From IMG/VR virus record IMGVR_UViG_3300029258_003221, positions 124,001-188,000 of that record: DNA of 64,000 nucleotides; one strand, 5' to 3'. The notes under the pieces were generated by a model. The model was not told the DNA's origin. It was given only the letters and a program-made list of their open reading frames with translations, and did no database searches. Shown one piece after another: positions 4,799-64,000 of this stretch. Position numbers and translations under genes: made by a program. Within the stretch, counting starts at the first letter, position 1. Each line of letters opens with the position of its first letter.

Positions 4799-4847
4799 GC
4801 TCGGAATTGTTGAATTAAAAGTTTTGCAACACCAATGTTCTGGGTGT

Positions 4848-5075
4848 CTAAGACCAATGTCTTGGCTTCATTACATCTTCCATCCAGCGGATGAATTCCT
4901 CCCGTGTCAGATCTGGAGGAGCCTCCACCGTCTGTATGTCCTCAGCATCACGCTGATCCAGTGATTCAATGAGTGGTGGCTGCTGTTCGGCCCATGCTCG
5001 TCGTGCCTCGTACTCGCTGCTGTCCTGTTCGTCGATGGCTGGACAGTCACCGAGGTCATCCGTATGCCCCTGCAT
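4848..5075 (-). CDS. hypothetical protein
   Basis: ORF, start moved to ATG with GGGAG RBS; stop overlaps GACACCC. Confidence 0.6.
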   Translation of the reverse strand: MQGHTDDLGDCPAIDEQDSSEYEARRAWAEQQPPLIESLDQRDAEDIQTVEAPPDLTREEFIRWMEDVMKPRHWS

Positions 5076-5149
5076 TGTCGTGCTCCCGTGGGTGGTGTTA
5101 GTGGGTGAGCCCCAGTGACTCACCCTCTCAACACTACTTAACCGGGTGT

Positions 5150-5596
5150 CTAGTAGTATGCTTTCCTCATCTCCTTTTCAAACATTGCGATGTCATCACG
5201 GCACCGTTGAGCCATGTCCTCCAGCACATGAACAGTTCCGATGACGTGGCTGGCTGGTTGTTCTTTGAGGGTAGCGATTGCCTTCTCAAGGGTTCGCAGT
5301 TCAGTGTGTGCCTTGTCAGCGGCTTCAGAGTTCTGTCGAAAGATCTCATCAGCGTTGGCGTTGAGAGTGTCCTCCCATTCCTGTTCAACTTTGAGGCACT
5401 CTTCCCAGAGTTCCTGTTCCTCGTCTTCAGCTTCCTGCTGGAGCAGGTCTTCGTGTTCCTGAATCAGTGCCTTGCTGAGGGCTCGCTGTGTCTTGCGTCG
5501 TCCCCGTTTGTCGTAAGTGTCAGACCCGTGAGTCAACCAGCAGTCTCCGTTGACCTTGCGTGCTCGTCGTGTGGCGTTGGCGATGGCTGAAACCAT
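5150..5596 (-). CDS. hypothetical protein, Arg-rich N-terminus and acidic coiled coil
   Basis: 148 aa, AGGAG RBS. Confidence 0.75.
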   Translation of the reverse strand: MVSAIANATRRARKVNGDCWLTHGSDTYDKRGRRKTQRALSKALIQEHEDLLQQEAEDEEQELWEECLKVEQEWEDTLNANADEIFRQNSEAADKAHTELRTLEKAIATLKEQPASHVIGTVHVLEDMAQRCRDDIAMFEKEMRKAYY

Positions 5597-5665
5597 TGTT
5601 GTGCTCCTGTGTTTCCCTTATGAGTGGGCAGTGTTGTTGTCACTGCCCACTCTCAGGGTGTCAGC

Positions 5666-5863
5666 TTAGGCAGCCCATGCGTGCTGTCGTGTATCGTTGA
5701 GAGCGGCAGAGAGGGCAGCGTTTGTTGCTTTGGTGGCTGCTGCGTCGTAGCCTCTCAGAAAAGTTTCGCCTTCGTGGCTTTCGGGATCAAGACCATGACT
5801 CATTGGCCATCGATCTTCACCGTGTTTGTAGGCATCCCATCCCATTTGGTAATACTTGTTCAT
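5666..5863 (-). CDS. hypothetical protein (C-terminal WAA)
   Basis: 65 aa, GGGGAG RBS. Confidence 0.7.
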   Translation of the reverse strand: MNKYYQMGWDAYKHGEDRWPMSHGLDPESHEGETFLRGYDAAATKATNAALSAALNDTRQHAWAA

Positions 5864-5909
5864 CGTTCTCCCCTGTTGGTGTTGTGTTGACAGTGTTTGA
5901 GTGGGTGTC

Positions 5910-6113
5910 TCATCCGAGTGGCACTGCTGGCATAATCCGCTTCATCACTGACCTGATCTCGTCGGTGACTTCACCGCCGTTAGCGACATGTCCCGCCAGA
6001 TCAATACATGCAGTGATTGCACTGGTTCTGAGGTATTTGTCATTGCGTGGTGAGTCACCTTTGAAGGCATCAACGTCTTCGGCAGTTCTCTTGTTGTAGT
6101 TCATGTCGAACAT
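5910..6113 (-). CDS. hypothetical protein
   Basis: 67 aa, flanked by motifs. Confidence 0.65.
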   Translation of the reverse strand: MFDMNYNKRTAEDVDAFKGDSPRNDKYLRTSAITACIDLAGHVANGGEVTDEIRSVMKRIMPAVPLG

Positions 6114-6237
6114 TGTTTTCCTGTGGGTGTCTTAGAGCAACTGAAAACGAACTGACGGGTTTGCCTTGACCACATTCAGTCCGTTATCAGTTGTTCTACA
6201 TGGCTCAGTCTCAGGAGGAGGAATTGAAGTGTTGCCG

Positions 6238-6435
6238 TTAGGCAGCACGTCGTCGGCTTGATCCCTTCTTAGTTCGTTTCAGGGTCAGCGGTTGTTTCTG
6301 ACGGTCAATCAGACGAACACCGTCAGTGGCGTTGTTTAACATCGCATAGTCGCACCTCGCTTCCTGTTCTTGATCAGAATTATATTCGGTTACACCCATT
6401 CCGGGAGCGATGACAACAAATCGGTTCTTGAACAT
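6238..6435 (-). CDS. hypothetical protein (C-terminal RRRAA)
   Basis: start moved to ATG with AGGAG RBS. Confidence 0.7.
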   Translation of the reverse strand: MFKNRFVVIAPGMGVTEYNSDQEQEARCDYAMLNNATDGVRLIDRQKQPLTLKRTKKGSSRRRAA

Positions 6436-6479
6436 TTGGCTCTCCTTTGTTGTTGATGATGTTCTGTTACTGGGTGTCG

Positions 6480-6656
6480 TCAATCACCAACATACCGAGC
6501 GAGTTCCATCTCACGTCTGAGTTTTTTCATCTCTTCCGGTTTGGCGTTGTCCATTCTTTTGCGAACGTCCTGTTGCCAGCATCGGTGATAGTGGTAGTGA
6601 TCTCCGGCGTTTCCTTCGTTAGGTCGGCCACAGAATTTGCACTTACCTTTTTTCAT
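6480..6656 (-). CDS. small Cys/His (putative Zn-binding) protein
   Basis: CKFC...HRC motif, GGAG RBS. Confidence 0.65.
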   Translation of the reverse strand: MKKGKCKFCGRPNEGNAGDHYHYHRCWQQDVRKRMDNAKPEEMKKLRREMELARYVGD

Positions 6657-6699
6657 GGTTTCGCTCCGTTGTGGTGTTGTTGATGTATGTTTATTAGGT

Positions 6700-6735
6700 G
6701 TCCACCGGGACAGGGAGCCAACTGTCCCGGTGGAC
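6700..6735 (-). terminator. strong intergenic hairpin
   Basis: 14-bp perfect stem GTCCACCGGGACAG/CTGTCCCGGTGGAC whose 3' arm runs into GACACCT; no U-tract. Confidence 0.45.
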
Positions 6736-6752
6736 TCACCACCAACCCACAC

Positions 6753-7043
6753 TCACATATTAAACCATTTGCCGCTGATGGCATCAGCGTATCGTTCCCC
6801 AGTGTAGTGAGGATCATCGCTGTTTATTTTGCTCCAACCGTAGGTTGTCACGTGCATTCGGTACTGCCCTGACGTGGCTTTGTCCCCTCGTTTGCGTCGT
6901 CGTCGTTCAACAGCGTATCGTTGAATCATCTTGTCAAAGCTGTCGAAGGCGAGTTCAATTTCCCGTGGCTTATCAGGGTCACGTTCCATGTGATTGAATT
7001 GTACCCGCATTGAAAAGCTGACAGTTTGCGGGTGTGTAGTCAT
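6753..7043 (-). CDS. hypothetical protein
   Basis: 96 aa, RBS, preceded by the intergenic module. Confidence 0.7.
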   Translation of the reverse strand: MTTHPQTVSFSMRVQFNHMERDPDKPREIELAFDSFDKMIQRYAVERRRRKRGDKATSGQYRMHVTTYGWSKINSDDPHYTGERYADAISGKWFNM

Positions 7044-7084
7044 TTGTCGTCCTTCCGTTGTTGTTGATGTTGTGTTAGTGGGTG

Positions 7085-7237
7085 TCAGCTTTTGACTTCC
7101 ACCTGTTCTCTTGGGTTGACGAAGAACGTGTTTCCTTTGCTGTCCATAGCTTCATTGTCGCCAGTTTTGATACATTCTCCATTCCAGCAGTGAAACGGGC
7201 GATTCTTGGGCAGTGTGTGAAACTCAACCATTTTCAT
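7085..7237 (-). CDS. hypothetical protein
   Basis: start moved; TGA stop overlaps motif. Confidence 0.6.
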   Translation of the reverse strand: MKMVEFHTLPKNRPFHCWNGECIKTGDNEAMDSKGNTFFVNPREQVEVKS

Positions 7238-7281
7238 GTCGTCCCTCTTAAGGAGTGTTGGTGATGTTGTGTTAGTGGGTG

Positions 7282-7485
7282 TCAGACAAAGCAGGACAGT
7301 GTTTGACTTGGGTGATGAGGTTGAACGGCTTCCCAGCAATTCAGAGCAGGCACCCAGATGCCGCCTGTTGTGTAGTTGGGATTGTCAACGATGAGGAACT
7401 CGGTTGTTCCGTTGTTCTGTCGATCATCGATGACCCAGCCGTGTTTCTCTTCACCGTTGATTGTGTAGAAGGTTTCGTTGTTCAT
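7282..7485 (-). CDS. hypothetical protein
   Basis: 67 aa; TGA stop overlaps motif. Confidence 0.65.
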   Translation of the reverse strand: MNNETFYTINGEEKHGWVIDDRQNNGTTEFLIVDNPNYTTGGIWVPALNCWEAVQPHHPSQTLSCFV

Positions 7486-7504
7486 GGCTCTTTACAGGGT
7501 GTCG

Positions 7505-7630
7505 TCAAGCAGCCCGACGTTCGTATTTCTTTTCCCGTCGTTTAGCTCTTTCCCTGTCCTTTTTTCTTCCTTGTTCACGTTTCTGGCGACGGCGATCTCT
7601 GTCGTGTCCCGTCTCTTCTCTGATGTACAT
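7505..7630 (-). CDS. 41-aa highly basic peptide ending RRAA (not in ORF track)
   Basis: manual translation MYIREETGHDRDRRRQKREQGRKKDRERAKRREKKYERRAA*; ATG directly follows GACACCC. Confidence 0.6.
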   Translation of the reverse strand: MYIREETGHDRDRRRQKREQGRKKDRERAKRREKKYERRAA

Positions 7631-7692
7631 GGGTGTCTCTTTGAGGGTTTGAAGAATGCCACCGGGATTTGTTCCCGGTGGCGTTAGGTTGT

Positions 7693-8094
7693 TTACGCTG
7701 CTCGCTGTGCGGCGAGTTCGGCGTCGGCCTGTTCCATTCCCAGCAGTACCAGAGCCGGGATATTAGTTTGTCCACCTTCCATGTGTTTGAAGGACTCGCA
7801 GAATTCATCCCATTCCCTTGCCGACCGGATAGGCACATCATTGCCGTATCGTGGTTTTTCGTACCATTCGGCGATATTAGGCCCACGTCTCTTGTGGCTG
7901 AACTTCACCGTATCCCCTCGTTTGGTGACACAAACAAAGGTGTTGTCAGTGAAAGTGATTCGATAGCCACCGGGAACCATTGTTTCCTTGAGTTCCCCTT
8001 TCTTGTTGGTTGTCATGATCGGAATCCAGTTTCGCTTTGCTTCTTTGATTCCGATTGGCTTACACGGTTTCAGTGTTTTGATGGCCTGCACCAT
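7693..8094 (-). CDS. hypothetical protein (C-terminal QRAA)
   Basis: 133 aa, GGGAG RBS. Confidence 0.75.
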   Translation of the reverse strand: MVQAIKTLKPCKPIGIKEAKRNWIPIMTTNKKGELKETMVPGGYRITFTDNTFVCVTKRGDTVKFSHKRRGPNIAEWYEKPRYGNDVPIRSAREWDEFCESFKHMEGGQTNIPALVLLGMEQADAELAAQRAA

Positions 8095-8144
8095 GATCGT
8101 CTCCCTGTTAGGAAAGTGTTGTTGATGTTTTGTTATTGGGTGTC

Positions 8145-8303
8145 TTAGGGGACTTCAACCCAATCGGTATAACCTTTGACTCGCCATGCTTCGTTGTAGA
8201 TATCGTCACCATCGTAATTGACAGTCACAACATCGAACTGTTCGAGGATCAGAGTTCGGAAGTAGAGTTTTCCGTTCTCTCGTTTGAATTCCACCGATTC
8301 CAT
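8145..8303 (-). CDS. hypothetical protein
   Basis: start moved to ATG with GGGAG RBS; TAA-GACACCC. Confidence 0.65.
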   Translation of the reverse strand: MESVEFKRENGKLYFRTLILEQFDVVTVNYDGDDIYNEAWRVKGYTDWVEVP

Positions 8304-8341
8304 TGTTTCGTCTCCCGTTGTTGGTAGTCTGTCAGTGGGTG

Positions 8342-8611
8342 TCAGACTCCACAAACTTTGTAGACGAGTTTGGTCCAGAACTTGTAGTCTTTTTCGACGA
8401 GCTGGTCGAAAACTTCCTGACTGGCTTGCATGGCGATGGATTCAAACTGTCCACCAACAACCATTTGTTCTTGCCATTTGCTGTCGGGGAAGGACTCTCG
8501 TTTTTCTTCGGCGATCTTTTTACGACGTTCGTATTCTTTGTCGCCGAGGTTGTTTCTGTGGCGTTGTTCGACTTCATTTTCTGGTGTGATTTCCCATTGA
8601 ACAGCGGACAT
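8342..8611 (-). CDS. hypothetical protein
   Basis: start moved to ATG with GGAGG RBS. Confidence 0.65.
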   Translation of the reverse strand: MSAVQWEITPENEVEQRHRNNLGDKEYERRKKIAEEKRESFPDSKWQEQMVVGGQFESIAMQASQEVFDQLVEKDYKFWTKLVYKVCGV

Positions 8612-8656
8612 GTTCGTCCTCCAGTTGAGTGTTAGTTGTTGATGGTTTGTTAGTGG

Positions 8657-8686
8657 GTGTCCCCCGGCGTTGTTGCCGGGGGACAC
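8657..8686 (-). terminator. hairpin downstream of ParB-like gene
   Basis: 12-bp stem GTGTCCCCCGGC/GCCGGGGGACAC whose 3' arm overlaps GACACCC. Confidence 0.45.
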
Positions 8687-8696
8687 GGTTCGTTGG

Positions 8697-9542
8697 TTAT
8701 GCAGCCCGTCGTCGGTTTCCGATGTTGTAGACCTGTTCCATTGCTGCAAAGCAGGCACTTCGGTTTGGTCGGTCGGTATCGTCTCGACAGGAGTTCTGTG
8801 CAATTCGGAATATCTCCGCAGCGGATCGTCGTCCCAGTCGATCTTTGATATCTTCAATTGAGGCGTCACCATAGGCTCTGATGAAATCAACCAGTCCTCT
8901 CAAGAACCCATTGCCACCAGCTTGGTATTCAAGCCCTCGCTTGCTCCTCCACAAACTGAGAATTTCAAACAGTTCGTTGAGAATGTCATGTGAATACGCT
9001 TCGGTAAGGGGTGTCAGAGACCGGATATCTGCCGTTCTGGTGTTGAATCCGGGAGTGTTGGGGATTGAAAATCCCCATTGTGTCAAGCCGTCTTCGATAT
9101 CGACAGCAAAAGGATATTCAGCTTCCAATGCTGCTGAAAATGCGTCCCAGACATTCATTCGACGACTGTTCTGAGTCAGTTCGTGGAAGATTGCAGCACA
9201 AGTTGCTTTGTTGACTCCGAAGTGGATTTCGCAAGTGATGTACTTTTGATGTTCCATCATTTCCATCATCCACAATGTGTGTCGTCCATCAATGGGTAGC
9301 AACTTTCCTTTGACATAGACTAAGATTGGATTTCTCACAGCCCGTCGATTGAAACTGTCTTTGAGTTCCAAGCTGTGCGACTTCACGTGGTCACGGAAGT
9401 TGTAGTTGTTGTTCTTTCCCAACTCGATTTTTTCTCTGTCTACCAGACAGAGATAAGCCAAGCTGGTAAGCTTGCAAAAACATTTTTCAATTCCTGCTTT
9501 GTGGTGTGTTTTTGCCAGTTTCTTAGGCTTAAAATTGTCCAC
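8697..9542 (-). CDS. ParB/Srx-like N-terminal domain protein (DUF6551-like)
   Basis: 281 aa; NPILV...PIDGRHTL motif followed by a helical domain; ends RRRAA. Confidence 0.65.
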   Translation of the reverse strand: MDNFKPKKLAKTHHKAGIEKCFCKLTSLAYLCLVDREKIELGKNNNYNFRDHVKSHSLELKDSFNRRAVRNPILVYVKGKLLPIDGRHTLWMMEMMEHQKYITCEIHFGVNKATCAAIFHELTQNSRRMNVWDAFSAALEAEYPFAVDIEDGLTQWGFSIPNTPGFNTRTADIRSLTPLTEAYSHDILNELFEILSLWRSKRGLEYQAGGNGFLRGLVDFIRAYGDASIEDIKDRLGRRSAAEIFRIAQNSCRDDTDRPNRSACFAAMEQVYNIGNRRRAA

Positions 9543-9610
9543 GTTTACTCTCCCCGAGTGTTAGAAAATGTTTTGAGCGTTGTTTGCTCACTGCCCTATC
9601 GCCGGGTGTC

Positions 9611-9649
9611 AAAAACATCACCCCCGACAACCCGGTATTGTCGGGGGTG
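9611..9649 (-). terminator. intrinsic terminator
   Basis: 12-bp stem CACCCCCGACAA/TTGTCGGGGGTG, then ATGTTTTT, then GACACCC. Confidence 0.6.
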
Positions 9650-9680
9650 TAAAAATATTTTCTTGTAAAAAGCGACTCAT

Positions 9681-9899
9681 TCAACAGAACCCTGCTGTAT
9701 AGAATCGTAGACGCTTGTCTTTTGGGCCGATTGGCAGTATCATTTCGACTACCACATCAGCCAGTTTGTTCGGCGGCGGTTTACCGCTGTACCGGGCAAA
9801 GTAGAATATCAGAAATGCAAACATCATTGCTCCAGTTTCAGGAAGAACCCAGACCTCCCTGTTTAGCACAGGGCACCCCGATTTCGTGCTCCTAGTCAC
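9681..9899 (-). CDS. hypothetical protein
   Basis: 72 aa ORF filling a gap; weak RBS. Confidence 0.35.
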   Translation of the reverse strand: MTRSTKSGCPVLNREVWVLPETGAMMFAFLIFYFARYSGKPPPNKLADVVVEMILPIGPKDKRLRFYTAGFC

Positions 9900-9957
9900 T
9901 CACAACGAACTGGACTAGCTGGGCGGGCGTTGTTTCGATGAGTTGTTAGTGGGTGTC

Positions 9958-10365
9958 TTACTCAACCCGGTCGTGGACTGAGATTGGTGCAGTGTAGTTA
10001 ATGTCATCATGCACCATTGCATTAGTGGTGCTGATGTAGCTGCCACCAGCCATGACGTGTTTGCCATTGCGAATTGCTCCGACCCACTTGGCGGCATAGG
10101 GGTTATCGAGACTTGGCGGTCCTGATCGTGGCAGGCAGAGGATCAGACTGTCATTGGTCAGGAAGTGACAACCTTTGACAATCTCTCTCACCTGACCATA
10201 TCTGGGCAGATTTCCATCGACATAGACACGCCAGACATTGATTGAGTCTCTTCGGCGGGTGATGCCATCATTGGTGCAGTCGTGGTGATTGATCAGCACC
10301 GTCATTCGGTGAACATGGGCACTGCATCGTTGTGCAATTGTTGGATTGGTCGTGGCGATTGTCAT
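9958..10365 (-). CDS. hypothetical protein
   Basis: 135 aa, GGGGAGAG RBS; TAA-GACACCC. Confidence 0.75.
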   Translation of the reverse strand: MTIATTNPTIAQRCSAHVHRMTVLINHHDCTNDGITRRRDSINVWRVYVDGNLPRYGQVREIVKGCHFLTNDSLILCLPRSGPPSLDNPYAAKWVGAIRNGKHVMAGGSYISTTNAMVHDDINYTAPISVHDRVE

Positions 10366-10420
10366 TGTCTCTCCCCAGAGAAATGTTTTGTTGTTGATGG
10401 TTGGTTACTGGGTGTCAGAT

Positions 10421-10560
10421 TGGAGATGGAGGGACTCGAACCCTCGTCCAAACTTATCACGTTATCCCAAACACGAGCGAAACATGGGCCTTTTCTCGTT
10501 GTCGCCTACCCTATAGCGGCGACTGTTCAGCGTGATAGCCTGTCAATACCATTCATCCCC
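10421..10560 (-). ncRNA. miniature tmRNA-like RNA (tRNA-like domain only, 140 nt)
   Basis: 5' GGGGAUG-AAUGGUAUUGAC and 3' GGAC-GAGGG-UUCGAGU-CCCUC-CAUCUCC-A; acceptor stem with G3.U70 and A73; no D-stem; helix 2 present; no room for an MLD or pseudoknots. Confidence 0.8.
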
Positions 10561-10576
10561 GAAAGAGTTAACTGTG

Positions 10577-10652: not shown

Positions 10653-10713
10653 TGCATCAGGGATTCAGGCCTAGTTGACTTGCCTTTGCCAGAGGCTTAT
10701 TGGAGCGGCTTTG

Positions 10714-11178: not shown

Positions 11179-11220
11179 TGTTTCTCCCCATGAGCGTTGT
11201 TGATGAATTGTCAACGGGTG

Positions 11221-56932: not shown

Positions 56933-56941
56933 GATCCACCT

Positions 56942-58074: not shown

Positions 58075-58561
58075 TATCAACCTCCCCTTCGATCTCTGGA
58101 ACACCAACAAGCAACTCCCTGATTTGTTCCTGAGAGACTTTGATGTCAATTACCTTGAAAACCCCTTCCCCTTCCAGCTTTTCCTTTTCTTGTTTTTGCT
58201 TTTCAATGAACCACTCGGGACTTTCTTCATTAGTGTATTCATCAACGACAGCAAGTGCTTCAGGAGCATATTCGCCATCGTATGATTCATTGCGTTGGAA
58301 AAACAGAACGTGGAGTTTCATTGTTGGTTCCTCGTCTTCTTCGATAGGCGTTAGAAACGGGTCTTCTGTGTAAGCATGTTGCTCTCCCTCATCCAACAAT
58401 GCTATCATGCCAACCATAAGAGCATGAAGAGCATGATGCTCTGGCTCCCTTTGTTTCCTAGTGAGTTGATCAAAAACCTCTTTCATTTGCACCAAATGAT
58501 CATGGGCATCATGTTGGGTTTTGACGTACCCCATTGGAGTTTTAAGAAGTCTTGATTTCAC
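58067..58561 (-). CDS. hypothetical protein
   Basis: 164 aa. Confidence 0.7.
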   Translation of the reverse strand: MKSRLLKTPMGYVKTQHDAHDHLVQMKEVFDQLTRKQREPEHHALHALMVGMIALLDEGEQHAYTEDPFLTPIEEDEEPTMKLHVLFFQRNESYDGEYAPEALAVVDEYTNEESPEWFIEKQKQEKEKLEGEGVFKVIDIKVSQEQIRELLVGVPEIEGEVDSD

Positions 58562-58983
58562 ACCATGACTCCACTTGGGATGTATCTGTCACAAACATCA
58601 GAAAGCATTGATGCCCAGCGTGCAGCCTCCATCTCATCTGCACGTTCATTTGCGTTTTGACGTTGCAGGATTTTAAGCTGCACTTCCTCAAGTTCACGTC
58701 TGCGTTCTGAATCCGAAACAGCAAACTTTGATTGATCTCTTGAGATCTCAAGCTGTACACGTTCCTGATCTTCTCTGAGTTGCTGAAGGGTGTCTATTTG
58801 TTTAAGACGCCTTTGAACCAGCTCATTTAACTCAGATTGAATCTGTTGACAGGCATCATGCCAATGTCCTGCCTCACGAACAAGTCGAAGATTTGCTCGA
58901 ATGTATTTGACCTGTGGATAGAAGGTCAAATTTTCAAAAGCTATCCGATCCTGTTCGTCTTCCAGTTCTTCTTCTGTCATCAA
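58558..58983 (-). CDS. coiled-coil hypothetical protein
   Basis: 141 aa. Confidence 0.7.
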   Translation of the reverse strand: MMTEEELEDEQDRIAFENLTFYPQVKYIRANLRLVREAGHWHDACQQIQSELNELVQRRLKQIDTLQQLREDQERVQLEISRDQSKFAVSDSERRRELEEVQLKILQRQNANERADEMEAARWASMLSDVCDRYIPSGVMV

Positions 58984-60119
58984 TCAACTCCATCAACACT
59001 CACGCTACGAAGTGCAGTATTTTTGTGCAAAGCATACCAACCTTCAGGCTTCACGGTTGCATGATCATCGTGTTCCATCCTTGGATCGTGACAATAAATC
59101 GTGCCTTCATGAACCATGCCTTCGCCGAAAAGATAATGCCTGTTCGCATTTTCATCATCAATTGGCATAATGATGCTTTCTTCAAATAGAGCATCGCAAC
59201 CAACTTCAGATGGCAAATTCTTTCTGGAAACAGGAACAAAGAACCATTCACCTTGCCTCAGAACATTTCCTTTACGTGCTTCCGGTGGTTTCAAACACTC
59301 ATAGGCATCTTCAACAGATGTAACTCGCTCAGGCAGAACACAACCGAAGTAAGTCCCTTCGTCCTGACCAATCAAATAAGTTTCGTCATTTTTGTTATTG
59401 TAAAGAACGACTGTTGCTGAACAGTGCCAACAGTGACTAAGCAATGTAAAGCCCTGTTTAGGTGGCTTTAATTTGTATTCTGGCTTACCTGCTTTTAGAT
59501 GTTCCTTGTCAGATTTACGGAGGTCAATTCTCTGATCAGGGATGTATGCAAGAATTGTCAATTCCATTGACCGCAACATCTTAACAACATCTTCAACATG
59601 GGCACCTGTCAGTTCGGAAAGACAACGAAAACTAACAGTGGGCATAGCTTCCAATCCACTGTCTTCGGCAATGGGGTACTTACAGGAATTCTCTTCCATA
59701 GCCCCATCCCAACCTTCTTCTTCAGCGTCCCCATTGAGAACAACAACATGCTTGTGTTTCTTGTTGAATTTATTGACGGGGTATTCTTTGAGCAAAACAG
59801 CACTCGGGACTTGATCAAAAGACAATTCAAAGTCGCCATATTCAAATCCATAGAAAGCCCCATCGTACAATGCAACCAAATAATTGTCAGTAAGGTAAAC
59901 AGGATAAACTGGTCCTTTTTGTTCTCGGTAGGGCCTCATTGCTAAATTGGTTGAAATATCTTCCAGCAGAAATCGCCCAAGATTCGTTCTCTTGTAAAGT
60001 TCCCTTCTCATGTCATCTGTGATATTACGATAAACAAGCATCATCCCTTTATCACTGAGAACAAAAGGGTTTGATGTGAAAATGTCATGTTGTTTTTCGG
60101 CTTTTGTCAGACGTGGCAT
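58980..60119 (-). CDS. RQGE-motif hypothetical phage protein
   Basis: 379 aa; LRQGEWFFVP...RH...HDDH. Confidence 0.8.
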   Translation of the reverse strand: MPRLTKAEKQHDIFTSNPFVLSDKGMMLVYRNITDDMRRELYKRTNLGRFLLEDISTNLAMRPYREQKGPVYPVYLTDNYLVALYDGAFYGFEYGDFELSFDQVPSAVLLKEYPVNKFNKKHKHVVVLNGDAEEEGWDGAMEENSCKYPIAEDSGLEAMPTVSFRCLSELTGAHVEDVVKMLRSMELTILAYIPDQRIDLRKSDKEHLKAGKPEYKLKPPKQGFTLLSHCWHCSATVVLYNNKNDETYLIGQDEGTYFGCVLPERVTSVEDAYECLKPPEARKGNVLRQGEWFFVPVSRKNLPSEVGCDALFEESIIMPIDDENANRHYLFGEGMVHEGTIYCHDPRMEHDDHATVKPEGWYALHKNTALRSVSVDGVD

Positions 60120-60130
60120 GATGAATGTCC

Positions 60131-60856
60131 TTAAAGTTGAATGTTTTTTGAATTTCCAATGAGTTCAAACGGCATAACCACGTTATCCGTCCACCCTTTG
60201 AGTTCACGCTCGGTGTCCAATAACAATTGGTCAAAAGAATAAGCTTCAAACCTCAGAGTTTTTTCTCCTATGAAACTCTGTCCGCTGTTATTTTTTGTGC
60301 ATTTTATAGACGTGCCTCTTCCCCCGCTTCCGGGAAAGATAAGAAGACTGGACTCATAGAAGTCATATCGTTCACCGACCTTTGATTTCCAAAAGACAGT
60401 AACTCCTCTGTCAGTGACATAATCATCAATTCGTTGATCAGGCACAAATTGAACAAACGCATCCGAATAAAAAATGAACCATCCATGTTCAACAAAAATG
60501 TCGAATGAATTTCCTCTGACAATCAAGCTGTCAATGCCTCTGGACTCATCCCCATATTCACCAGTGAGATAATGAGTTTCAATTTTCCCATAGACATCTT
60601 TGTATGCACGACCACCGGCTTTTACATCATCTTCAAGAATGCGTAACGCTTCCTCAAAGTTAATGGATTCCCCATAGTATTTTTCTGATTCTCCCTCTTT
60701 CTCCAAAGAAAGGACACGAAGACCTCCACCAGAGCGGAATCCGTGCAACTTAAAGCCATCAAAGAGAGCGACTTGAATTGATTCACGCTTCGATTGCATC
60801 AAGTTCAAAATCCTCCAGAACGTGTTCATCCACAGCATCAGTGCGGATTTGTCCAT
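60131..60856 (-). CDS. hypothetical protein (start uncertain)
   Basis: 241 aa ORF. Confidence 0.7.
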   Translation of the reverse strand: MDKSALMLWMNTFWRILNLMQSKRESIQVALFDGFKLHGFRSGGGLRVLSLEKEGESEKYYGESINFEEALRILEDDVKAGGRAYKDVYGKIETHYLTGEYGDESRGIDSLIVRGNSFDIFVEHGWFIFYSDAFVQFVPDQRIDDYVTDRGVTVFWKSKVGERYDFYESSLLIFPGSGGRGTSIKCTKNNSGQSFIGEKTLRFEAYSFDQLLLDTERELKGWTDNVVMPFELIGNSKNIQL

Positions 60857-61211
60857 TTGGGAACACGTTCAAAATGTAGAAGGTGTCTTCTTTGTGCAAT
60901 TCTGATTGCATTAGATATGCCACCTGCTTGACTGCATCTTCGTAGGAAAGGTGAGGGTATTCAGTGTCACCATCAATGCCCCACTGCATCAACTCACCAG
61001 AGCCACAGGCAGCAGCAACCCAAAATCCAACCTGACCACAATCAGTCTGGTCAAGACAATCTTCTTCAAGATTGTGAGCAAAGACTTCTTCACAGTGGCC
61101 TTGATCTTCCCTGATCTCAATACAGGGAGCAACTGTACTAAACTGAATGCCTTCGTCAACATCAATGTATGCCAAAAGGTGACCTGTATTGGTGCAAATC
61201 TTGAGTTTCAT
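60783..61211 (-). CDS. hypothetical protein
   Basis: 142 aa, ATGA coupling. Confidence 0.7.
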   Translation of the reverse strand: MKLKICTNTGHLLAYIDVDEGIQFSTVAPCIEIREDQGHCEEVFAHNLEEDCLDQTDCGQVGFWVAAACGSGELMQWGIDGDTEYPHLSYEDAVKQVAYLMQSELHKEDTFYILNVFPNGQIRTDAVDEHVLEDFELDAIEA

Positions 61212-61483
61212 GCTACTGCCTTTTTGGTCAAAAGTTCAGCCACACCATAAGCGTATTTTGAAGTGTAATCAACGTGGCCTGATGAAGTGGTTTCAATGCG
61301 AAACAAATCTTCGACAGATGGGGGTTTCACCCCATTTTGTTCTGCCCATTTAATCGCAGCTTGATGAATGGCGTTTCTTTCATTTTCAATCCATTCATCG
61401 GACTCACATACTGAACGATACTCCTGTTCCGCAACAAGAGCATCGTACAAAGTCCGTGCTGGTTCAAAATGAGGACGGAACAT
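61208..61483 (-). CDS. hypothetical protein
   Basis: start moved. Confidence 0.65.
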   Translation of the reverse strand: MFRPHFEPARTLYDALVAEQEYRSVCESDEWIENERNAIHQAAIKWAEQNGVKPPSVEDLFRIETTSSGHVDYTSKYAYGVAELLTKKAVA

Positions 61484-61493
61484 AGTTTTTCTT

Positions 61494-61868
61494 TCAGGCA
61501 ACTTTGTCGTAAACGGCATCCAAAGCAGTTTCGATAGCCTCTTCGACAACCAGTTTGATATGACCTTCAACGGGTGTCCCCTTTTGTTCAAAAGCATTTA
61601 CTAAAGCAAGAGTGAAACTCTCAATGGTGTTGAGAGCCGTGTTGTATTCAGCACGGGCGATAATTTCATCTTCAGATTCACTTGCTGAAGGATTGTATGC
61701 GTCGTGGGTATATTCAGCTTTTGATCCATCACAACTGTAAAAACAATTTGATGTATCACAATGAGGGCAAACTTCACGATCCAAATCACTGACGATGGAA
61801 CCGCCACCTTCGCCATCAGTGTCAATTGTCAGAGTCATGCCATGGCAGGAAAGGTTAATGATCTTCAT
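61494..61868 (-). CDS. hypothetical protein with CxxC..C..C motif
   Basis: 124 aa, AGGAG RBS. Confidence 0.7.
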   Translation of the reverse strand: MKIINLSCHGMTLTIDTDGEGGGSIVSDLDREVCPHCDTSNCFYSCDGSKAEYTHDAYNPSASESEDEIIARAEYNTALNTIESFTLALVNAFEQKGTPVEGHIKLVVEEAIETALDAVYDKVA

Positions 61869-61919
61869 GTTGTACTCCTTGTGAGAATTAAGTCATCAAG
61901 ATCCATTAAATGGGTGTCT

Positions 61920-62360
61920 TCAAGCGTTGTTCACAATGTCGAGCAGCGGATTCTTCAACGGTTCAATTTCACGAACATCCTTCAGGTAATCCAACCACTC
62001 TGGTCGGTCATGGTTTCGGACATTCAGTTTGTTGTCTACCCATTTGGCAGCATCTTCCAATACCTGTTCTTTTGTGTCTACGAGATTCCATCCGGTGTCA
62101 TGAATGAGACAATTGCTTTTGAAACGCCAACCCCAACAGGTTTTGCGTTCTACGACCTGCGGGACAGAATCCCCAATGGATCGCTTGGGCAACTTAAAGT
62201 CAATTTGACAAACTTCGTCGCCAGCAGCGATGACAATAAATGCTGGTTCAATGTGAATCCCAACTTGACTCTTTCGCTCATCGCTCATGTCAGCATCGAC
62301 ATAACCCCAGCGAACCCATTCACCATGTTTGATCTGGATGTGCCAACCGTCTTCATTCAT
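61920..62360 (-). CDS. hypothetical protein
   Basis: 146 aa. Confidence 0.7.
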   Translation of the reverse strand: MNEDGWHIQIKHGEWVRWGYVDADMSDERKSQVGIHIEPAFIVIAAGDEVCQIDFKLPKRSIGDSVPQVVERKTCWGWRFKSNCLIHDTGWNLVDTKEQVLEDAAKWVDNKLNVRNHDRPEWLDYLKDVREIEPLKNPLLDIVNNA

Positions 62361-62579
62361 GGTTTTTCCACGTTTCCTCGTCGAAAGATTGCATCAACTT
62401 TTTCATCATCGACGAAAGTTTTGGTCACTGAAATGCCACGTTGTTTTCGGTATTCCTGAATGTCAAGAACAGCCTGTCGCCAACGTGGATAAAGTGGATC
62501 GGGGCGGCATAGCCTATCTTGAGCATCGTGCCAATAAACGCTGTTGCATTGGCACAGGCTGAAATGAATGTTCTTCGTT

Positions 62580-62861
62580 TCATGTCACGATTTCCTTAAC
62601 TTGTTCCCAGTTGTATGGGGAGTCGCCAATAAAAATTGTCAATTCATCTTCCTGAATTTGACACAAAAGATTGTCAAGAACGATGTTATTACGACGATCT
62701 TCCATGATCAACCGAAGAACATCAAGATCATCATCTGGAATTGAATCCCAGAGATTTCCATAGGCTGATCCGTAGTCATCGTAAATCCGATAACCAAAGG
62801 AAACATGCCCTGTTCTCACGTCTTCAAATTTAGTTGGCTCAATGCAAAGTCGGTTACTCAT
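62580..62861 (-). CDS. hypothetical protein
   Basis: 93 aa, AGGAG RBS. Confidence 0.7.
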   Translation of the reverse strand: MSNRLCIEPTKFEDVRTGHVSFGYRIYDDYGSAYGNLWDSIPDDDLDVLRLIMEDRRNNIVLDNLLCQIQEDELTIFIGDSPYNWEQVKEIVT

Positions 62862-62877
62862 TCAGATAGCTCCTGAT

Positions 62878-63150
62878 TTAGATTTTAGGCGAACGAGTTG
62901 TTACAGGAACACCTTTGAATTTCTTCTCAGTGTTCTTTGGAAGAATACCTGAAGTGATCAACTGATCTTCAATGTCTTCAAGCATGGAATCTATTTGATC
63001 GTCCATGTCGTTGTAGAAGAGAACACCACTCTCAATAACATCATGATTCAGATTGCCATGAATCTCTTCAATTTGATCTTGCGAGAGATTTAAACCATGT
63101 GCATCAGTGACAATCTGAATATCATCGATTGTAGTTTCCCAAGCTGACAT
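62878..63150 (-). CDS. hypothetical acidic protein
   Basis: 90 aa, AGGAG RBS. Confidence 0.7.
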   Translation of the reverse strand: MSAWETTIDDIQIVTDAHGLNLSQDQIEEIHGNLNHDVIESGVLFYNDMDDQIDSMLEDIEDQLITSGILPKNTEKKFKGVPVTTRSPKI

Positions 63151-63333
63151 AAATTTCTCCTATTCTGATTATCTGATCCCATCAAGCTTTTCTTGAAGAA
63201 TGATTCTTTCTTTTTCGTATTCACCAATAGTCGCTTTATGTGATTGAGTTTTCACAAACAGCAACACAATGATTACAGCCAGCACAAGGATGAACAGGAC
63301 ATTTGATTTCAGCCAATTCCACATTGTTTTCTC

Positions 63334-63597
63334 CTATGCAACTGCGAGTTTTCTTACAAACTCTTCACGGGTGTCCCCAACTGTTTCCCAAAAAGACCGA
63401 CCTTCAAATGAATCAAGTCTTTCTTTGACACTGACGTTCTCAACATCAGACATCTTCAACCAACGACCGACAACATTTGCGTGTTCTTCAGATCGTGTCA
63501 CAACACAAACAAAACGATCATTTGTGATATTGACAGCAACAACTGGAACACAGTTATCCAGCAAACATTTAAGTTTCAGCTCTGCAACCTGTGGCAT
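63334..63597 (-). CDS. hypothetical protein
   Basis: 87 aa. Confidence 0.65.
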   Translation of the reverse strand: MPQVAELKLKCLLDNCVPVVAVNITNDRFVCVVTRSEEHANVVGRWLKMSDVENVSVKERLDSFEGRSFWETVGDTREEFVRKLAVA

Positions 63598-63632
63598 CTT
63601 GCCTTCTTTCAGTTAAAGTTTCCAAAACAAAA

Positions 63633-63747
63633 GGAATAGACAACCGATGGCTTTGTTCTACCCGCTACGGCAGTTTTAACTATCTGGACTAGCCCTTTAG
63701 CATCAGGCACTGCTTACTTCATCCAGTTTTGCACGGTTGCTGATTCC
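63633..63747 (-). ncRNA. candidate pseudoknotted RNA
   Basis: closing stems GGAAU/AUUCC and CAACCG/CGGUUG; inner CUGGAU/GUCCAG with GCAGU/ACUGC pseudoknot. Confidence 0.4.
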
Positions 63748-63748
63748 A

Positions 63749-64000
63749 TTACGATTCTTCATCAGGTGTCTCATTTGGACCTTCCAGCTTCCCCTGATCA
63801 TCGACATGAGGAAGCAGGAATTGCTCCAACTGATCTTTCAGGGCCTCAAGACCGAGTGCTTCAACCTTGCTGGTAAAGAACCCTTCAACCTCACCTTTTG
63901 CTTCAGTTACAGTTCGATCAATCGCCTCATTGAACTGACTCTGAATGAAAGGAACAGTTGATCGCAGCTTAGAGACAACAGCACCAACCATTCTGCGAAG
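63749..64000 (-). CDS. hypothetical phage protein (probably 5'-truncated by window edge)
   Basis: frame remains open to the end of the window. Confidence 0.6.
   Translation of the reverse strand, partial: LRRMVGAVVSKLRSTVPFIQSQFNEAIDRTVTEAKGEVEGFFTSKVEALGLEALKDQLEQFLLPHVDDQGKLEGPNETPDEES

What the first reader, a model, noticed from the sequence alone, without database searches (positions are those of the whole stretch)
4842..63770. Strand-polar, graded array of GACACCC sites across a 59-kb gene island
Seen: about 100 exact GGGTGTC copies on the + (template) strand by manual count, plus about 45 A/C/T-GGTGTC variants, against about 4 expected for a 7-mer. I noticed none in the opposite orientation and none in the first 4.7 kb. 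Density is graded: 33 exact copies in 4.8-14.5 kb (about 1 per 290 bp) versus 8 in 55-64 kb. Counting variants, spacing is mostly a few hundred bp. Copies occur both between genes and inside ORFs in different frames, so this is not an amino-acid bias. Known analogies: mycobacteriophage L5 stoperators (asymmetric, oriented with transcription, near gene boundaries), Chi and KOPS polar motifs, and the T7 gp4 primase site 5'-GTGTC-3' (primer pppACAC), which is contained in this motif. Inference: a cis-acting system marking the first-entering DNA. It could be loading sites for an element-encoded DNA-binding protein, priming or transcription-start sites read from the + strand, or recombination anchors for cassette shuffling.
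Basis: partly seen in the sequence, partly recalled or inferred. Interest (0 to 1): 0.92.

Follow-up and report, generated by a model that had tools for sequence, protein, structure and literature searches.

The report
One-way short-motif track in huge phage
A 78-kb block of small genes in a huge phage carries about 180 evenly spaced copies of GACACC, all pointing the same way; related phages have the same kind of track, one with a different motif, so it is a real and apparently undescribed signal, most likely places where RNA polymerase is loaded in one direction.

Summary
GGGTGTC occurs 99 times on the + strand and never on the - strand. The 6-mer core GGTGTC is 153:0 in the window.

The window lies in a 234.6-kb viral contig. 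There the array spans about 78 kb (179:0). It coincides with a block of roughly 190 small genes on one strand, so the gene-sense motif is GACACC(C).

- **Not a codon effect:** the enrichment does not come from amino-acid or codon usage.
- **Reverse orientation:** it is purged (0 against 10-17 expected).
- **Spacing:** it is far more even than chance and more even than gene spacing.
- **Density:** it rises from 1.4 to 3.5 sites per kb in the direction of transcription. It stops at a hairpin where transcription converges.
- **Head of the array:** it lies beside a conserved module of HNH, ParB-like, sigma-70-family and RuvB-like AAA+ genes.

Five related phages, found through the sigma gene, have the same polar arrays. 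Four use GACACC and one uses GGACC (55:0).

My best reading, at about 0.35, is minimal single-element promoters or RNA-polymerase loading sites for the phage sigma factor. The rivals are guide sites for the RuvB-like translocase, primase sites, stoperator-like roadblocks, strand-specific nick sites and evasion of orientation-dependent restriction. I found no prior description.

The parts
4751..63375 (+). Polar motif array inside the window. There are 153 GGTGTC cores on the + strand (99 of them GGGTGTC), which read GACACC(C) on the gene-sense (-) strand. No copy lies in the reverse orientation.
   Evidence: The array continues outside the window to about contig position 207 kb.
4848..64000 (-). 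Co-oriented block of about 150 small ORFs, mostly without known families. The array coincides with this block.
   Evidence: and the JGI gene calls. Pfam and PHROG searches are mostly empty.
4772..4789 (.). GC-rich hairpin (GGTGGGGTCTCCCCCACC) at the downstream end of the array. It lies between the last two motif copies (4751 and 4842), where - strand and + strand transcription converge.
185..4302 (+). Convergent + strand genes (two DUF6745-like proteins) with no motif in either orientation. This is the outer boundary of the array.
21746..21797 (-). Intrinsic-terminator-like hairpin plus T-run, followed at once by GACACCC. The arrangement is terminator then motif.
   Evidence: The same arrangement occurs at L129:11190, L131:3418, L137:965 and L137:3643.
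9604..9649 (-). Second terminator-like hairpin plus T-run that runs directly into GACACCC.
8095..8144 (-). Example of the 'type A' intergenic unit: stop codon, GACACCC-AATAAC, a CA-rich leader (AAACATCAACAACA), GGGAGA, then ATG. The motif lies 33-49 nt before the start codon in about 25 such units between 5 and 22 kb.
33044..33056 (-). Example of the 'type B' placement. The motif fills the spacer between the ribosome-binding site and the start codon (GAGGACACCCATG). This placement is common between 24 and 48 kb.
14500..15525 (-). DUF932 gene. It has three internal motif copies (14798, 15032, 15280) and one flanking copy (14465), spaced 234-333 bp apart. This shows the spacing is set per base pair, not per gene.
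21817..22764 (-). ParB-like protein with a ParB HTH domain. It is one of three ParB-superfamily proteins of the block and a candidate reader of the motif.
8697..9542 (-). DUF6551 (ParB-like) gene. In a strain that is about 98% identical, the segment 8663-9584 is replaced by 944 other bases. One boundary abuts the motif copy at 8655 and the other lies about 20 nt from the copy at 9604.

Best explanation
The motif GACACC(C), read on the non-template strand, is a short orientation-dependent loading signal for a machine that tracks along the DNA in the direction of transcription. The most likely machine is host RNA polymerase carrying the phage's own sigma-70-family factor. That factor is encoded at the head of the array.

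On this reading each copy is a minimal single-element promoter, comparable to the 8-bp T4 late promoter or to an extended -10 element. Polymerase is therefore loaded every 250-1000 bp across a 78-kb block of about 190 small early or accessory genes.

Where there is non-coding space, the copy sits right after the upstream stop codon or terminator. It is followed by an A/T-rich TAA-type element and lies 33-49 nt before the next start codon. Where genes abut, copies are written into coding sequence by synonymous codon choice, preferentially near the 3' ends of genes. Reverse copies are purged because they would fire antisense transcription into this dense one-way traffic.

**Shown:** the polarity, the enrichment at the nucleotide level, the even spacing, the gradient, the co-extension with the gene block, the link with the sigma/RuvB-like module, and conservation in relatives, one of which has a changed motif.

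**Inferred:** One possibility is compensation for polymerase loss or late entry of this DNA. Another is a T7-like role of transcription in pulling the genome into the cell.
For: 1. A sigma-70-family gene lies at the head of the array (Pfam Sigma70_r2 30.8 bits, above the cut-off of 24; TIGR02937 covering regions 2 and 4; phrog_351 sigma factor).
2. In all six phages that carry this sigma there is a motif copy in the intergenic space upstream of the sigma gene. In the four closest there are 2, 2, 2 and 4 tandem copies. Those four also have a copy at or just past the sigma stop codon, and three have one after the terminator of the next gene, although the flanking DNA is not alignable.
3. The motif directly follows six terminator-like hairpins, where transcription would have to restart.
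4. Sites are about twice as frequent as expected in the 75 nt upstream of start codons. 44% of genes have one within 100 nt, against 26% in position-shifted controls (maximum 38% in 1000).
5. Non-coding density is 7.4 per kb against 2.0 per kb in coding sequence.
6. Intragenic copies are skewed to the 3' part of genes (mean relative position 0.64, KS p = 1e-4; composition-matched 6-mers 0.47).
7. Intergenic copies share a downstream element at a fixed short distance: ACTAAC here, AATAG, GCATAG and ATAAT in relatives. The distance to the ATG is constrained to 33-49 nt.
8. The array starts and ends with the co-oriented gene block.
9. One of the two reverse-strand copies found outside the array, at contig 110,280, is intergenic and in sense with the local opposite-strand genes. 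I did not examine the context of the other.
10. A host-type promoter-like sequence (TTTACA-16-TAGAAT) precedes the ParB-like/sigma genes, which fits an early-to-middle cascade.
Against: 1. Spacing is even at the base-pair level, not the gene level. Local CV is 0.41 against 0.62 when sites are re-placed within their own gene units (0 of 2000 as low). Site number scales with gene length at 3-4 per kb.
2. 60% of copies lie more than 75 nt from the next start codon.
3. No -35 or -10 partner element exists at fixed or variable distance. The core holds only about 13 bits.
4. In the 622-kb relative the motif is a bare 5-mer, GGACC. It shows no intergenic preference and no 3'-of-gene bias, and it continues on the same DNA strand through two opposite-strand genes. 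That looks like a DNA-level signal, not a promoter.
5. The sigma region 4.2 helix does not covary with the motif. The GGACC phage resembles ours, while a GACACC phage differs.
6. About 180 promoters in 78 kb has no precedent.
7. There are no RNA data. None was listed in the run search.
Confidence: 0.35

Rival explanations
1. KOPS-like guide or loading sites for a phage-encoded double-strand DNA translocase. The candidate motor is the RuvB-like AAA+ ATPase encoded next to the sigma-like protein, which would then act as its DNA-recognition partner. The motor would load at the sites in one orientation and track toward the end of the array, for example to reel in, clear or process this DNA. Reverse sites would send it the wrong way.
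For: - The AAA+ protein matches only RuvB among solved structures, across the ATPase and most of the C-terminal region.
- Its gene lies just downstream of the sigma-like gene in all six phages, directly adjacent in four and separated by one small gene in two.
- The skew is absolute, the spacing is even at the base-pair level, and density rises toward a fixed end point with an abrupt stop. This mirrors what is established for KOPS and other architecture-imparting sequences near dif.
- The GGACC array of the 622-kb relative ignores gene orientation and gene boundaries.
- The motif is short and stands alone.
Against: - No mirror-image array exists on the other side of the end point.
- RuvB itself has no sequence specificity.
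- It does not explain the link to start codons, the 3'-of-gene bias, the fixed 33-49 nt leader, or the tandem copies upstream of the sigma gene.
- A density of one site per 270 bp is 10-40 times that of KOPS.
Confidence: 0.2
2. Recognition sites for a T7-type (zinc-finger DnaG-like) primase on the strand that always serves as lagging-strand or displaced-strand template. 5'-GGGTGTC-3' contains the T7 gp4 site 5'-GTGTC-3'. The relative's 5'-GGTCC-3' contains GGTC. Even spacing would set Okazaki fragment length.
For: - The motif contains the known T7 primase site (established knowledge; the sequence is).
- Both motif variants share GG-T(GT)-C.
- Even coverage at the base-pair level, independent of frame and, in L139, of gene orientation.
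- The core is short, at 5-7 nt.
Against: - It gives no reason to purge reverse copies (0 against 10-17 expected in two phages).
- The array is confined to 78 kb of a genome of at least 234 kb. The rest is at background, with no mirror array on the other strand beyond either boundary.
- With T7 polarity the fork would run head-on into all 190 genes.
- There is no selection for single-strand accessibility.
- Tandem copies 55-80 bp apart upstream of the sigma gene are conserved.
- No primase gene was seen in the 137 kb of the contig I examined.
Confidence: 0.1
3. Stoperator-like polar roadblocks or silencing sites. A phage DNA-binding protein, for example one of the three ParB-superfamily proteins, binds each copy and blocks or silences transcription of the whole early block in an orientation-dependent way. 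This is what mycobacteriophage L5 gp71 does at its asymmetric stoperators.
For: - Sites are asymmetric and uniformly oriented with transcription.
- Many overlap stop codons or sit in short intergenic spaces (27 of 47 non-coding copies lie within -2 to +3 nt of the upstream stop).
- Tandem copies upstream of the regulator-like gene resemble operators.
- ParB-like genes lie at the head of the array and inside it.
- Even coverage would silence spurious starts anywhere in the block.
Against: - L5 stoperators are 13 bp, number about 30 per genome and are intergenic. Here the core is 6-7 bp (5 bp in a relative), there are about 180 copies, and two thirds are inside genes.
- ParB-type proteins normally read palindromes.
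- Reverse copies would be harmless, so their purging is unexplained.
- No sign of lysogeny genes was seen.
Confidence: 0.1
4. Strand-specific nick sites, as in T5 or Pseudomonas phage tf, made by the syntenic HNH or a ParB-like nuclease. All nicks are kept on the non-template strand so that transcription is not blocked. They might serve as swivels or, as in T4 late transcription, as polar loading points for a tracking activator.
For: - Strand polarity is absolute, as for T5 and tf nicks (tf: PMC3517423).
- An HNH nuclease gene is conserved upstream of the module in the three long loci.
- Pairing of a sigma factor with an AAA+ ATPase recalls the T4 gp55/clamp-loader logic (established knowledge).
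- A reverse site would put a break in the template strand.
Against: - I have no data on nicks. Only assembled contigs could be laid on the window, and no pile-up of ends was reported.
- Known phages have 4-13 specific nicks, not 180.
- In L139 four forward sites lie in opposite-strand genes.
- The small proteins after the AAA+ gene gave no clamp-like prediction (pLDDT 49, uninformative).
Confidence: 0.07
5. Evasion of an orientation-dependent host restriction system (Type III, Type ISP or MANTIS-like) that cuts only between inverted site pairs. The phage has lost every copy in one orientation, as T7 has for EcoP15I. The remaining orientation is enriched for an unrelated reason.
For: - One-strand depletion of asymmetric 5-6 bp sites is a documented evasion route. 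T7 has 36 EcoP15I sites, all in direct repeat (bioRxiv 10.64898/2026.09.23.753747).
- Motif length and shape (GGACC, GACACC) resemble Type III sites such as AGACC (from memory).
- The motif differs between related phages, as restriction specificities do.
Against: - It explains only the missing orientation. It does not explain the 11-32-fold enrichment by synonymous codon choice, the even spacing, the gradient, or the conserved intergenic positions.
- At least two reverse copies exist elsewhere in the genome, and one forms a head-to-head pair with the whole array. Immunity would therefore be incomplete.
Confidence: 0.06
6. An RNA-level signal in the sense transcripts. Each GACACC would be a cleavage site for a sequence-specific endoribonuclease (as T4 RegB acts on early mRNAs), or a seed target for a small RNA or RNA-binding protein that times the decay of early messages.
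For: - The motif is always in the mRNA sense.
- Many copies lie right after stop codons or in the spacer before the start codon.
- One copy per roughly 300 nt would reach every message.
- The block encodes a CsrA homologue.
Against: - The motif is no more accessible in real flanks than in shuffled ones (0.485 against 0.523, not significant).
- Purging of the reverse complement from the same strand is only weakly explained.
- In L139 copies lie antisense to two genes.
- The motif lacks the GGA core of CsrA sites in this phage.
Confidence: 0.05

Closest known systems
Minimal single-element viral promoters (T4 late promoter TATAAATA read by gp55; Mimivirus early AAAATTGA)
   Same: A short stand-alone motif, read in one orientation and strongly over-represented, linked to a virus-encoded specificity factor. 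Here that factor is a sigma-70-family protein at the head of the array.
   Different: Copy number and density are far higher (about 180 in 78 kb). Two thirds of copies are inside genes. Spacing is even per base pair and density is graded. A relative uses a bare 5-mer. No transcription starts have been mapped.
T7 class II/III promoters and the one-orientation EcoP15I sites of T7
   Same: All copies point with transcription over the whole gene block. The reverse orientation is absent. T7 transcription also draws the genome into the cell, which is a possible reason for one-way loading sites.
   Different: T7 promoters are 23 bp, number 17, and are read by a single-subunit polymerase. The T7 CAGCAG skew is about 3.7-fold and is not known to be evenly spaced. 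Here enrichment is 11-32-fold and is written by synonymous codon choice.
KOPS / architecture-imparting sequences read by FtsK
   Same: A short polar motif with strong strand skew, denser toward a fixed end point and stopping there. The motif co-evolves with its reader (PMC3384302). A hexameric DNA pump (RuvB-like) is encoded beside the array.
   Different: KOPS are 8-mers about every 4-12 kb, mirrored on both replichores and read by a host FtsK gamma domain. This array is one-sided, 10-40 times denser, and coincides with a transcription block.
Mycobacteriophage L5 stoperators (gp71)
   Same: Asymmetric sites, uniformly oriented with transcription, often at gene boundaries, in tens of copies.
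   Different: Stoperators are 13 bp, about 30 per genome and intergenic, and belong to a temperate repressor system. Here the core is 6-7 bp, with about 180 copies, mostly inside genes and evenly spaced.
T7 gp4 primase recognition sites (5'-GTGTC-3', GGGTC, TGGTC)
   Same: The + strand motif GGGTGTC contains GTGTC. The relative's GGTCC contains GGTC.
   Different: Primase sites are not known to be purged from the other strand or confined to one gene block. The polarity here would make replication head-on to transcription.
PeSL promoter/stem-loop cassettes of T4-type hyperplastic regions
   Same: A repeated regulatory unit between many small orphan genes in a plastic region. One strain difference here replaces a segment bounded at or close to two copies.
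   Different: PeSLs are longer composite elements found only between genes. Here the conserved part is 7 nt, and most copies are inside genes at regular distances.

Membership tests
Sigma-70-family promoter | A cognate sigma factor is encoded or available | tested here: met
   A 291-aa protein at L129:9063-9938. Pfam Sigma70_r2 scores 30.8 bits (cut-off 24). TIGR02937 covers regions 2 and 4. It also matches phrog_351.
Sigma-70-family promoter | Two recognition blocks (-35 and -10) 15-19 bp apart, or an extended -10 element | tested here: not met
   There is no second block at fixed or variable distance. The only extra signal is a weak TAA-type element 2-4 nt downstream in non-coding copies.
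Sigma-70-family promoter | Location upstream of genes, in sense orientation | tested here: inconclusive
   All copies are in sense. They are twofold enriched within 75 nt upstream of start codons and skewed to the 3' part of genes. However, 60% lie further away and spacing is set per base pair.
Sigma-70-family promoter | Transcripts start a few bases downstream of the element | not testable with these tools
   No RNA run was listed for this sequence.
KOPS / FtsK-orienting polar sequences | Strong strand skew that increases toward, and ends at, a defined point | tested here: met
   179:0. Density rises from 1.37 to 3.47 per kb toward contig position 128.7 kb and stops there.
KOPS / FtsK-orienting polar sequences | A mirror-image array on the other side of that point (two replichores) | tested here: not met
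   In the 32 kb to the left there are 1 reverse and 3 forward copies.
KOPS / FtsK-orienting polar sequences | Read by an FtsK/SpoIIIE-type translocase | tested here: not met
   No FtsK-family gene was seen in the 137 kb of the contig examined. The adjacent motor is RuvB-like AAA+.
T7-type primase recognition site | 5'-GTC-3' core with a cryptic 3' C on the lagging-strand template | tested here: met
   GGGTGTC ends in GTGTC. This shows sequence resemblance only.
T7-type primase recognition site | Present wherever a lagging strand must be primed, on opposite strands either side of an origin | tested here: not met
   The array is confined to 78 kb. Elsewhere density is at background, and there is no strand switch.
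T7-type primase recognition site | The element encodes a zinc-finger/TOPRIM primase | not tested
   Only contig positions 96.6-233.9 kb were read. No primase was seen there, and positions 1-96 kb were not fetched.
Chi (RecBCD/AddAB) | Over-represented and skewed in the host chromosome | not testable with these tools
   The host is unknown. The genome scan with the sigma profile returned only distant sigma factors.
Chi (RecBCD/AddAB) | Reverse copies are neutral, so they are not purged | tested here: not met
   Reverse copies number 0 against 10-17 expected in two phages.
L5-type stoperators | Asymmetric sites in one orientation relative to transcription | tested here: met
L5-type stoperators | Sites of about 13 bp confined to short intergenic spaces, tens per genome, with a cognate repressor | tested here: not met
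   The core is 6-7 bp, 106 of 153 copies are inside genes, and there are about 180 copies. No repressor was identified.
Orientation-dependent restriction evasion (T7/EcoP15I pattern) | An asymmetric 5-6 bp site lost from one strand only | tested here: met
   153:0 in the window, 55:0 for GGACC in L139. Literature.
Orientation-dependent restriction evasion (T7/EcoP15I pattern) | No inverted pair anywhere in the genome | tested here: not met
   Reverse copies lie at contig 110,280 and about 233,040.
Orientation-dependent restriction evasion (T7/EcoP15I pattern) | The retained orientation is near the count expected from composition | tested here: not met
   It is 11-fold (6-mer) to 32-fold (7-mer) enriched and evenly spaced.
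T5/tf-type strand-specific nick sites | Physical single-strand breaks at the motif in virion DNA | not testable with these tools
   Only assembled contigs were available for laying on the window.
Integron attC / gene-cassette recombination sites | An imperfect inverted-repeat site at each cassette boundary, and an integrase | tested here: not met
   There is no conserved inverted repeat around the copies. Copies lie inside long genes. No integrase was seen.
Leading region of a conjugative element (ssDNA promoters, first-entering DNA) | oriT/relaxase context with single-strand hairpin promoters | tested here: not met
   The contig is a 234.6-kb viral contig with baseplate and other phage genes. 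There was no near-identity DNA match to plasmids; a protein search with the DUF932 gene found only distant plasmid homologues at 31% identity or less. DUF932 and ParB-like genes also occur in phages.

The most novel reading that the evidence does not exclude
The array is not a set of promoters. It is a new kind of phage 'track': a KOPS-like, evenly spaced, one-way guide code. It would be read by a phage-encoded pair consisting of a sigma-like DNA reader and a RuvB-like DNA pump, or by a strand-specific nickase that feeds a tracking activator. Its specificity co-evolves within a clade of huge phages (GACACC in five, GGACC in one). Its role would be to move, import or activate a 78-kb block of accessory genes in one direction.
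Probability: 0.25. Interest if true: 0.92.

Novelty: new variant of a known kind. Interest (0 to 1): 0.8.

Why it matters
Huge phages carry long one-way blocks of small unknown genes that probably decide the first minutes of infection. How these blocks are expressed or handled is unknown.

This work gives a simple sequence rule (a 5-7 nt motif, one direction, every few hundred bases, none reversed) that marks such a block in at least six related phages. The motif changes between them, so a specific reader must exist. Obvious candidates (a sigma factor, a RuvB-like motor and ParB-like proteins) are encoded at the head of the track.

If the copies are promoters, this would be the densest promoter array I know of. 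It would also be a direct handle on the timing of huge-phage gene expression. If they are guide sites for a translocase, or nick sites, it would be a new class of architecture-imparting sequence outside cellular chromosomes.

Either way the rule can be used to find and orient such blocks in metagenomic contigs, and the hypotheses can be separated with standard assays.

Tried and rejected
1. **Conjugative leading region.** This was my first idea, from DUF932 and the ParB-like genes. I rejected it because the contig is a viral 234.6-kb contig with phage structural genes. There was also no near-identity DNA match in the plasmid collection; a protein search with the DUF932 gene found only distant plasmid homologues.
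2. **Relatives by exact pattern scan.** Scanning viral contigs for GACACCCACTAACA gave six loci with apparent polar GACACC runs (L039, L100, L069, L047, L008, L020). All were false. Most are Thr/Pro-rich repeat proteins, and the others are scattered copies in unrelated genes.
3. **T7/T3/SP6-type promoter.** The resemblance to CACTAA is only partial, and no such polymerase was seen.
4. **Accessibility of the motif.** Folding real against shuffled flanks gave no signal on either strand (the first attempt, timed out).
5. **Periodicity of gaps.** There is no helical-repeat or codon periodicity.
6. **Partner elements.** A search for -35 or -10 partners found none.
7. **Covariation with the sigma DNA-reading helix.** Six sequences showed no covariation with the motif.
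8. **Sliding clamp.** The structure prediction of the 213-aa protein after the AAA+ gene was of low confidence and uninformative.
9. **Variant laying from four metagenome runs.** Divergence was about 2% and the list was truncated. This is too little to test conservation of the copies, but it revealed one cassette replacement.
10. **RNA runs.** None was listed.
11. **More relatives.** The metagenome, viral and genome collections returned only the same phage, short contigs or distant sigma factors. Relatives reached through a small membrane protein (L149-L165) lack the sigma module in the stretch fetched and show no array. They serve as negative controls.
12. **Chi.** Rejected as the main reading because reverse copies are purged and the array is 78 kb deep.

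Full report
**1.

GGGTGTC occurs 99 times in the window, always on the + strand. Dinucleotide shuffles give 7.7 on both strands together, with a maximum of 15. The core is the 6-mer GGTGTC: 153 copies on +, none on -. The base before it is G in 99 cases, A in 35, C in 12 and T in 7.

The first copy is at 4751 and the first exact copy at 4842. There is nothing in 1-4750.

From 4.8 kb to the end of the window about 150 small ORFs all lie on the - strand. In gene sense the motif therefore reads GACACC(C).

**2. It is selected at the nucleotide level, in one orientation only**

- Markov models of order 0-3 expect 13-42 sense copies of the 6-mer, against 152 observed.
- The same models expect 10-14 reverse copies, against none observed.
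- Inside ORFs, Asp-Thr is written GAC-ACC in 62 of 99 cases. Codon usage predicts 9-12.
- Shuffling synonymous codons within genes gives 27 +/- 4 copies against 101 observed. It gives 7.3 +/- 2.4 reverse copies against 0 observed.
- Copies occur in all three frames (64/12/30) and in non-coding DNA.

**3. The spacing is even, and it is set per base pair, not per gene**

- Within every 10-kb block the coefficient of variation of the gaps is 0.34-0.49. A Poisson process gives 1.
- Against random placement with the same local density, local CV is 0.41 versus 0.91 (minimum 0.69 in 2000 simulations).
- Gaps under 150 bp number 9 versus 49 expected.
- Re-placing each copy at random within its own gene unit still gives CV 0.62 (minimum 0.50) and 30 short gaps.
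- Site spacing is more regular than gene-start spacing (CV 0.53).
- Copy number scales with gene length at 3-4 per kb. The 1-kb DUF932 gene holds three internal copies 234-248 bp apart.
- The gaps show no helical-repeat or codon periodicity.

**4. There is nevertheless a link with gene boundaries**

- Non-coding DNA (about 11% of the block) holds 47 of 153 copies: 7.4 per kb against 2.0 per kb in coding sequence.
- 27 of those 47 lie within -2 to +3 nt of the upstream stop codon.
- Copies are about twice as frequent as expected in the 75 nt before a start codon.
- Intragenic copies are skewed to the 3' part of genes. Their mean relative position is 0.64 (KS p = 1e-4). Composition-matched 6-mers give 0.47.

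Two non-coding arrangements recur. Between 5 and 22 kb the unit is: stop codon, GACACCC-A(C/G)TAAC, a CA-rich leader, GGGAGA, then ATG, with 33-49 nt from motif to ATG. Between 24 and 48 kb the motif often fills the spacer between the ribosome-binding site and the ATG (GAGGACACCCATG).

Two strong terminator-like hairpins in the window run straight into a copy, at 21797-21746 and 9649-9604.

**5. What the element is**

The window is positions 124,001-188,000 of a 234,631-bp IMG/VR viral contig from sediment and seawater metagenomes. I walked the contig from 96.6 to 233.9 kb.

The array runs from 128.75 kb to about 207 kb: 179 GGTGTC against 0 reverse in 78.3 kb. Density is 1.37 per kb in the upstream third, 2.27 in the middle third and 3.47 in the downstream third. 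It therefore rises in the direction of transcription. It stops at a GC-rich hairpin where transcription converges with + strand genes.

The largest gap, 2,428 bp, is an inserted IS605-type TnpB gene.

Outside the array, counts over about 59 kb are near or below background: about 10 forward and 2 reverse copies. None occurs in 10 kb of baseplate and tail genes. One of the two reverse copies is intergenic and in sense with the local opposite-strand genes.

At the head of the array lie:
- a host-type promoter-like sequence;
- a ParB-like gene;
- a sigma-70-family gene (Sigma70_r2 30.8 bits; TIGR02937 over regions 2 and 4; phrog_351);
- an AAA+ gene that matches only RuvB among solved structures;
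- an HNH gene a few kb upstream.

**6. Relatives**

An exhaustive profile search with the sigma protein found a family of proteins of about 290 aa. Five further contexts could be read. In all of them the RuvB-like gene lies just downstream of the sigma gene, and the three long loci also share the HNH and ParB-like genes. All have a polar array on the sense strand:

| Locus | Sigma protein | Motif | Forward:reverse | Notes |
|---|---|---|---|---|
| L131 | P0002 (48% identical to ours) | GACACC | 4:0 | All four intergenic |
| L137 | P0003 | GACACCC | 5:0 | Four intergenic, one at a gene's 3' end |
| L138 | P0004 | GACACCA | 9:0 | Four tandem copies upstream of sigma |
| L140 | P0011 | GGACACC | 26:1 | Starts at the head of the co-oriented block; CV 0.56 |
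| L139 | P0008 (622-kb contig) | GGACC | 55:0 | 17-20 and 15-17 expected; CV 0.57 |

.

In the four closest phages the copies occupy the same places although the flanks are not alignable. There are two to four upstream of sigma and one at or just past the sigma stop codon. In three of the four there is also one after the terminator of the RuvB-like gene.

Our contig shows no GGACC polarity (51:57). Eighteen other phage loci fetched in passing show nothing comparable.

In L139 the copies show no intergenic or 3'-of-gene bias. They continue on the same DNA strand through two opposite-strand genes.

**7. Interpretation**

Several facts together call for a specific reader that tracks the DNA in one direction:
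- strict polarity;
- purging of the reverse orientation;
- even coverage;
- a graded density;
- a motif that changes within the clade.

The facts that tie the copies to gene starts, terminators and the sigma gene make RNA polymerase with the phage sigma factor my first choice (0.35). On this reading each copy is a minimal one-element promoter. Reverse copies are removed because they would fire antisense transcription.

Against this stand the base-pair-level spacing, the absence of any partner element, the bare 5-mer of L139, and the lack of covariation with the sigma 4.2 helix. The main rival is a KOPS-like guide for the adjacent RuvB-like motor (0.2).

- **Primase sites.** The motif contains the T7 site GTGTC. 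But this does not explain the purging, the confinement to one block, or the conserved tandem copies.
- **Orientation-dependent restriction.** This is a documented cause of one-strand depletion. It cannot explain the enrichment, the spacing or the gradient, and reverse copies exist elsewhere in the genome.
- **Other readings.** Stoperator-like roadblocks, T5-like nick sites and an RNA-level signal remain possible at low weight. The motif is not preferentially unpaired in either strand.

**8. Novelty**

No paper in the library mentions the motif in this sense. Searches for polar or evenly spaced phage motifs returned only the known analogies.

I file it as a new variant of a known kind (polar cis-acting arrays). 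There is a real chance (about 0.25) that it is a new kind of guide code.

**9. Limits**

- There are no RNA data, no raw reads, no host and no cultured phage.
- Positions 1-96 kb of the contig were not read.
- Only six members of the clade were examined, three of them on contigs under 6 kb.
- My gene calls in the window come from a simple heuristic. They were checked against JGI calls where the two overlap.

Noticed in passing
window 10420-10560 (-): A short tmRNA-like gene. Rfam RF00023 scores 53.7 bits (gathering score 47). ARAGORN predicts the tag peptide DNEKRPMFRSCLG*. Its tRNA-like 3' end is followed within 4 nt by a motif copy. Positions 10421-10453 attract very high depth from many unrelated contigs in metagenome runs.
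   Followed up: partly
window 8663-9584: In a strain that is about 98% identical (a 33-kb contig of run X6), this segment (the DUF6551/ParB-like gene) is replaced by 944 unrelated bases. One boundary abuts the motif copy at 8655 and the other lies about 20 nt from the copy at 9604.
   Followed up: partly
L126:160-1338 (contig 195,813-196,991; outside the window): An IS605-family TnpB gene (OrfB_IS605, Cas12f-like) is inserted in the array in the opposite orientation. It carries no motif copy and accounts for the largest gap in the array (2,428 bp).
   Followed up: yes
L126:4595-4771 (about window 68.4 kb; outside the window): A CsrA homologue (PF02599) is encoded inside the array.
   Followed up: no
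L130:8279-9979, L130:3598-5250 and L130:6480-7028 (contig 214-220 kb): Upstream of the array the phage encodes three notable proteins: a proteasome-ATPase-like AAA protein (TIGR03689, 277 bits), a WGR-PARP protein and a NUDIX hydrolase.
   Followed up: no
L139 (622,399-bp contig Ga0502760_0000013, 127.4-148.4 kb): A very large related phage contig carries a polar 5-mer, GGACC (55:0 in 21 kb). Both orientations belong to the degenerate palindrome GGWCC, so every such site has its A on the same strand.
   Followed up: partly
window 836-2476 and 2527-4302 (+): Two large paralogue-like proteins with weak DUF6745 matches lie just outside the array, on the convergent strand.
   Followed up: no
window 10669: Three of the four metagenome runs laid on the window carry a 25-nt insertion (CTGACTACTCCATTGGACTTCTCCA) relative to it.
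   Followed up: no
L134:10528-20528 (contig 96.6-106.6 kb): CCGCCACC occurs 8 times on one strand and never on the other, within 10 kb of tail and baseplate genes. It is probably a repeat within a 1376-aa protein.
   Followed up: no
L129:7590-7640 (leader of the ParB-like gene at the head of the array): A near-palindrome, GTGTGACACGGTGTGTC, followed by a T-run lies between a host-type promoter-like sequence and the ParB-like gene. It contains imperfect copies of the motif in both orientations.
   Followed up: no
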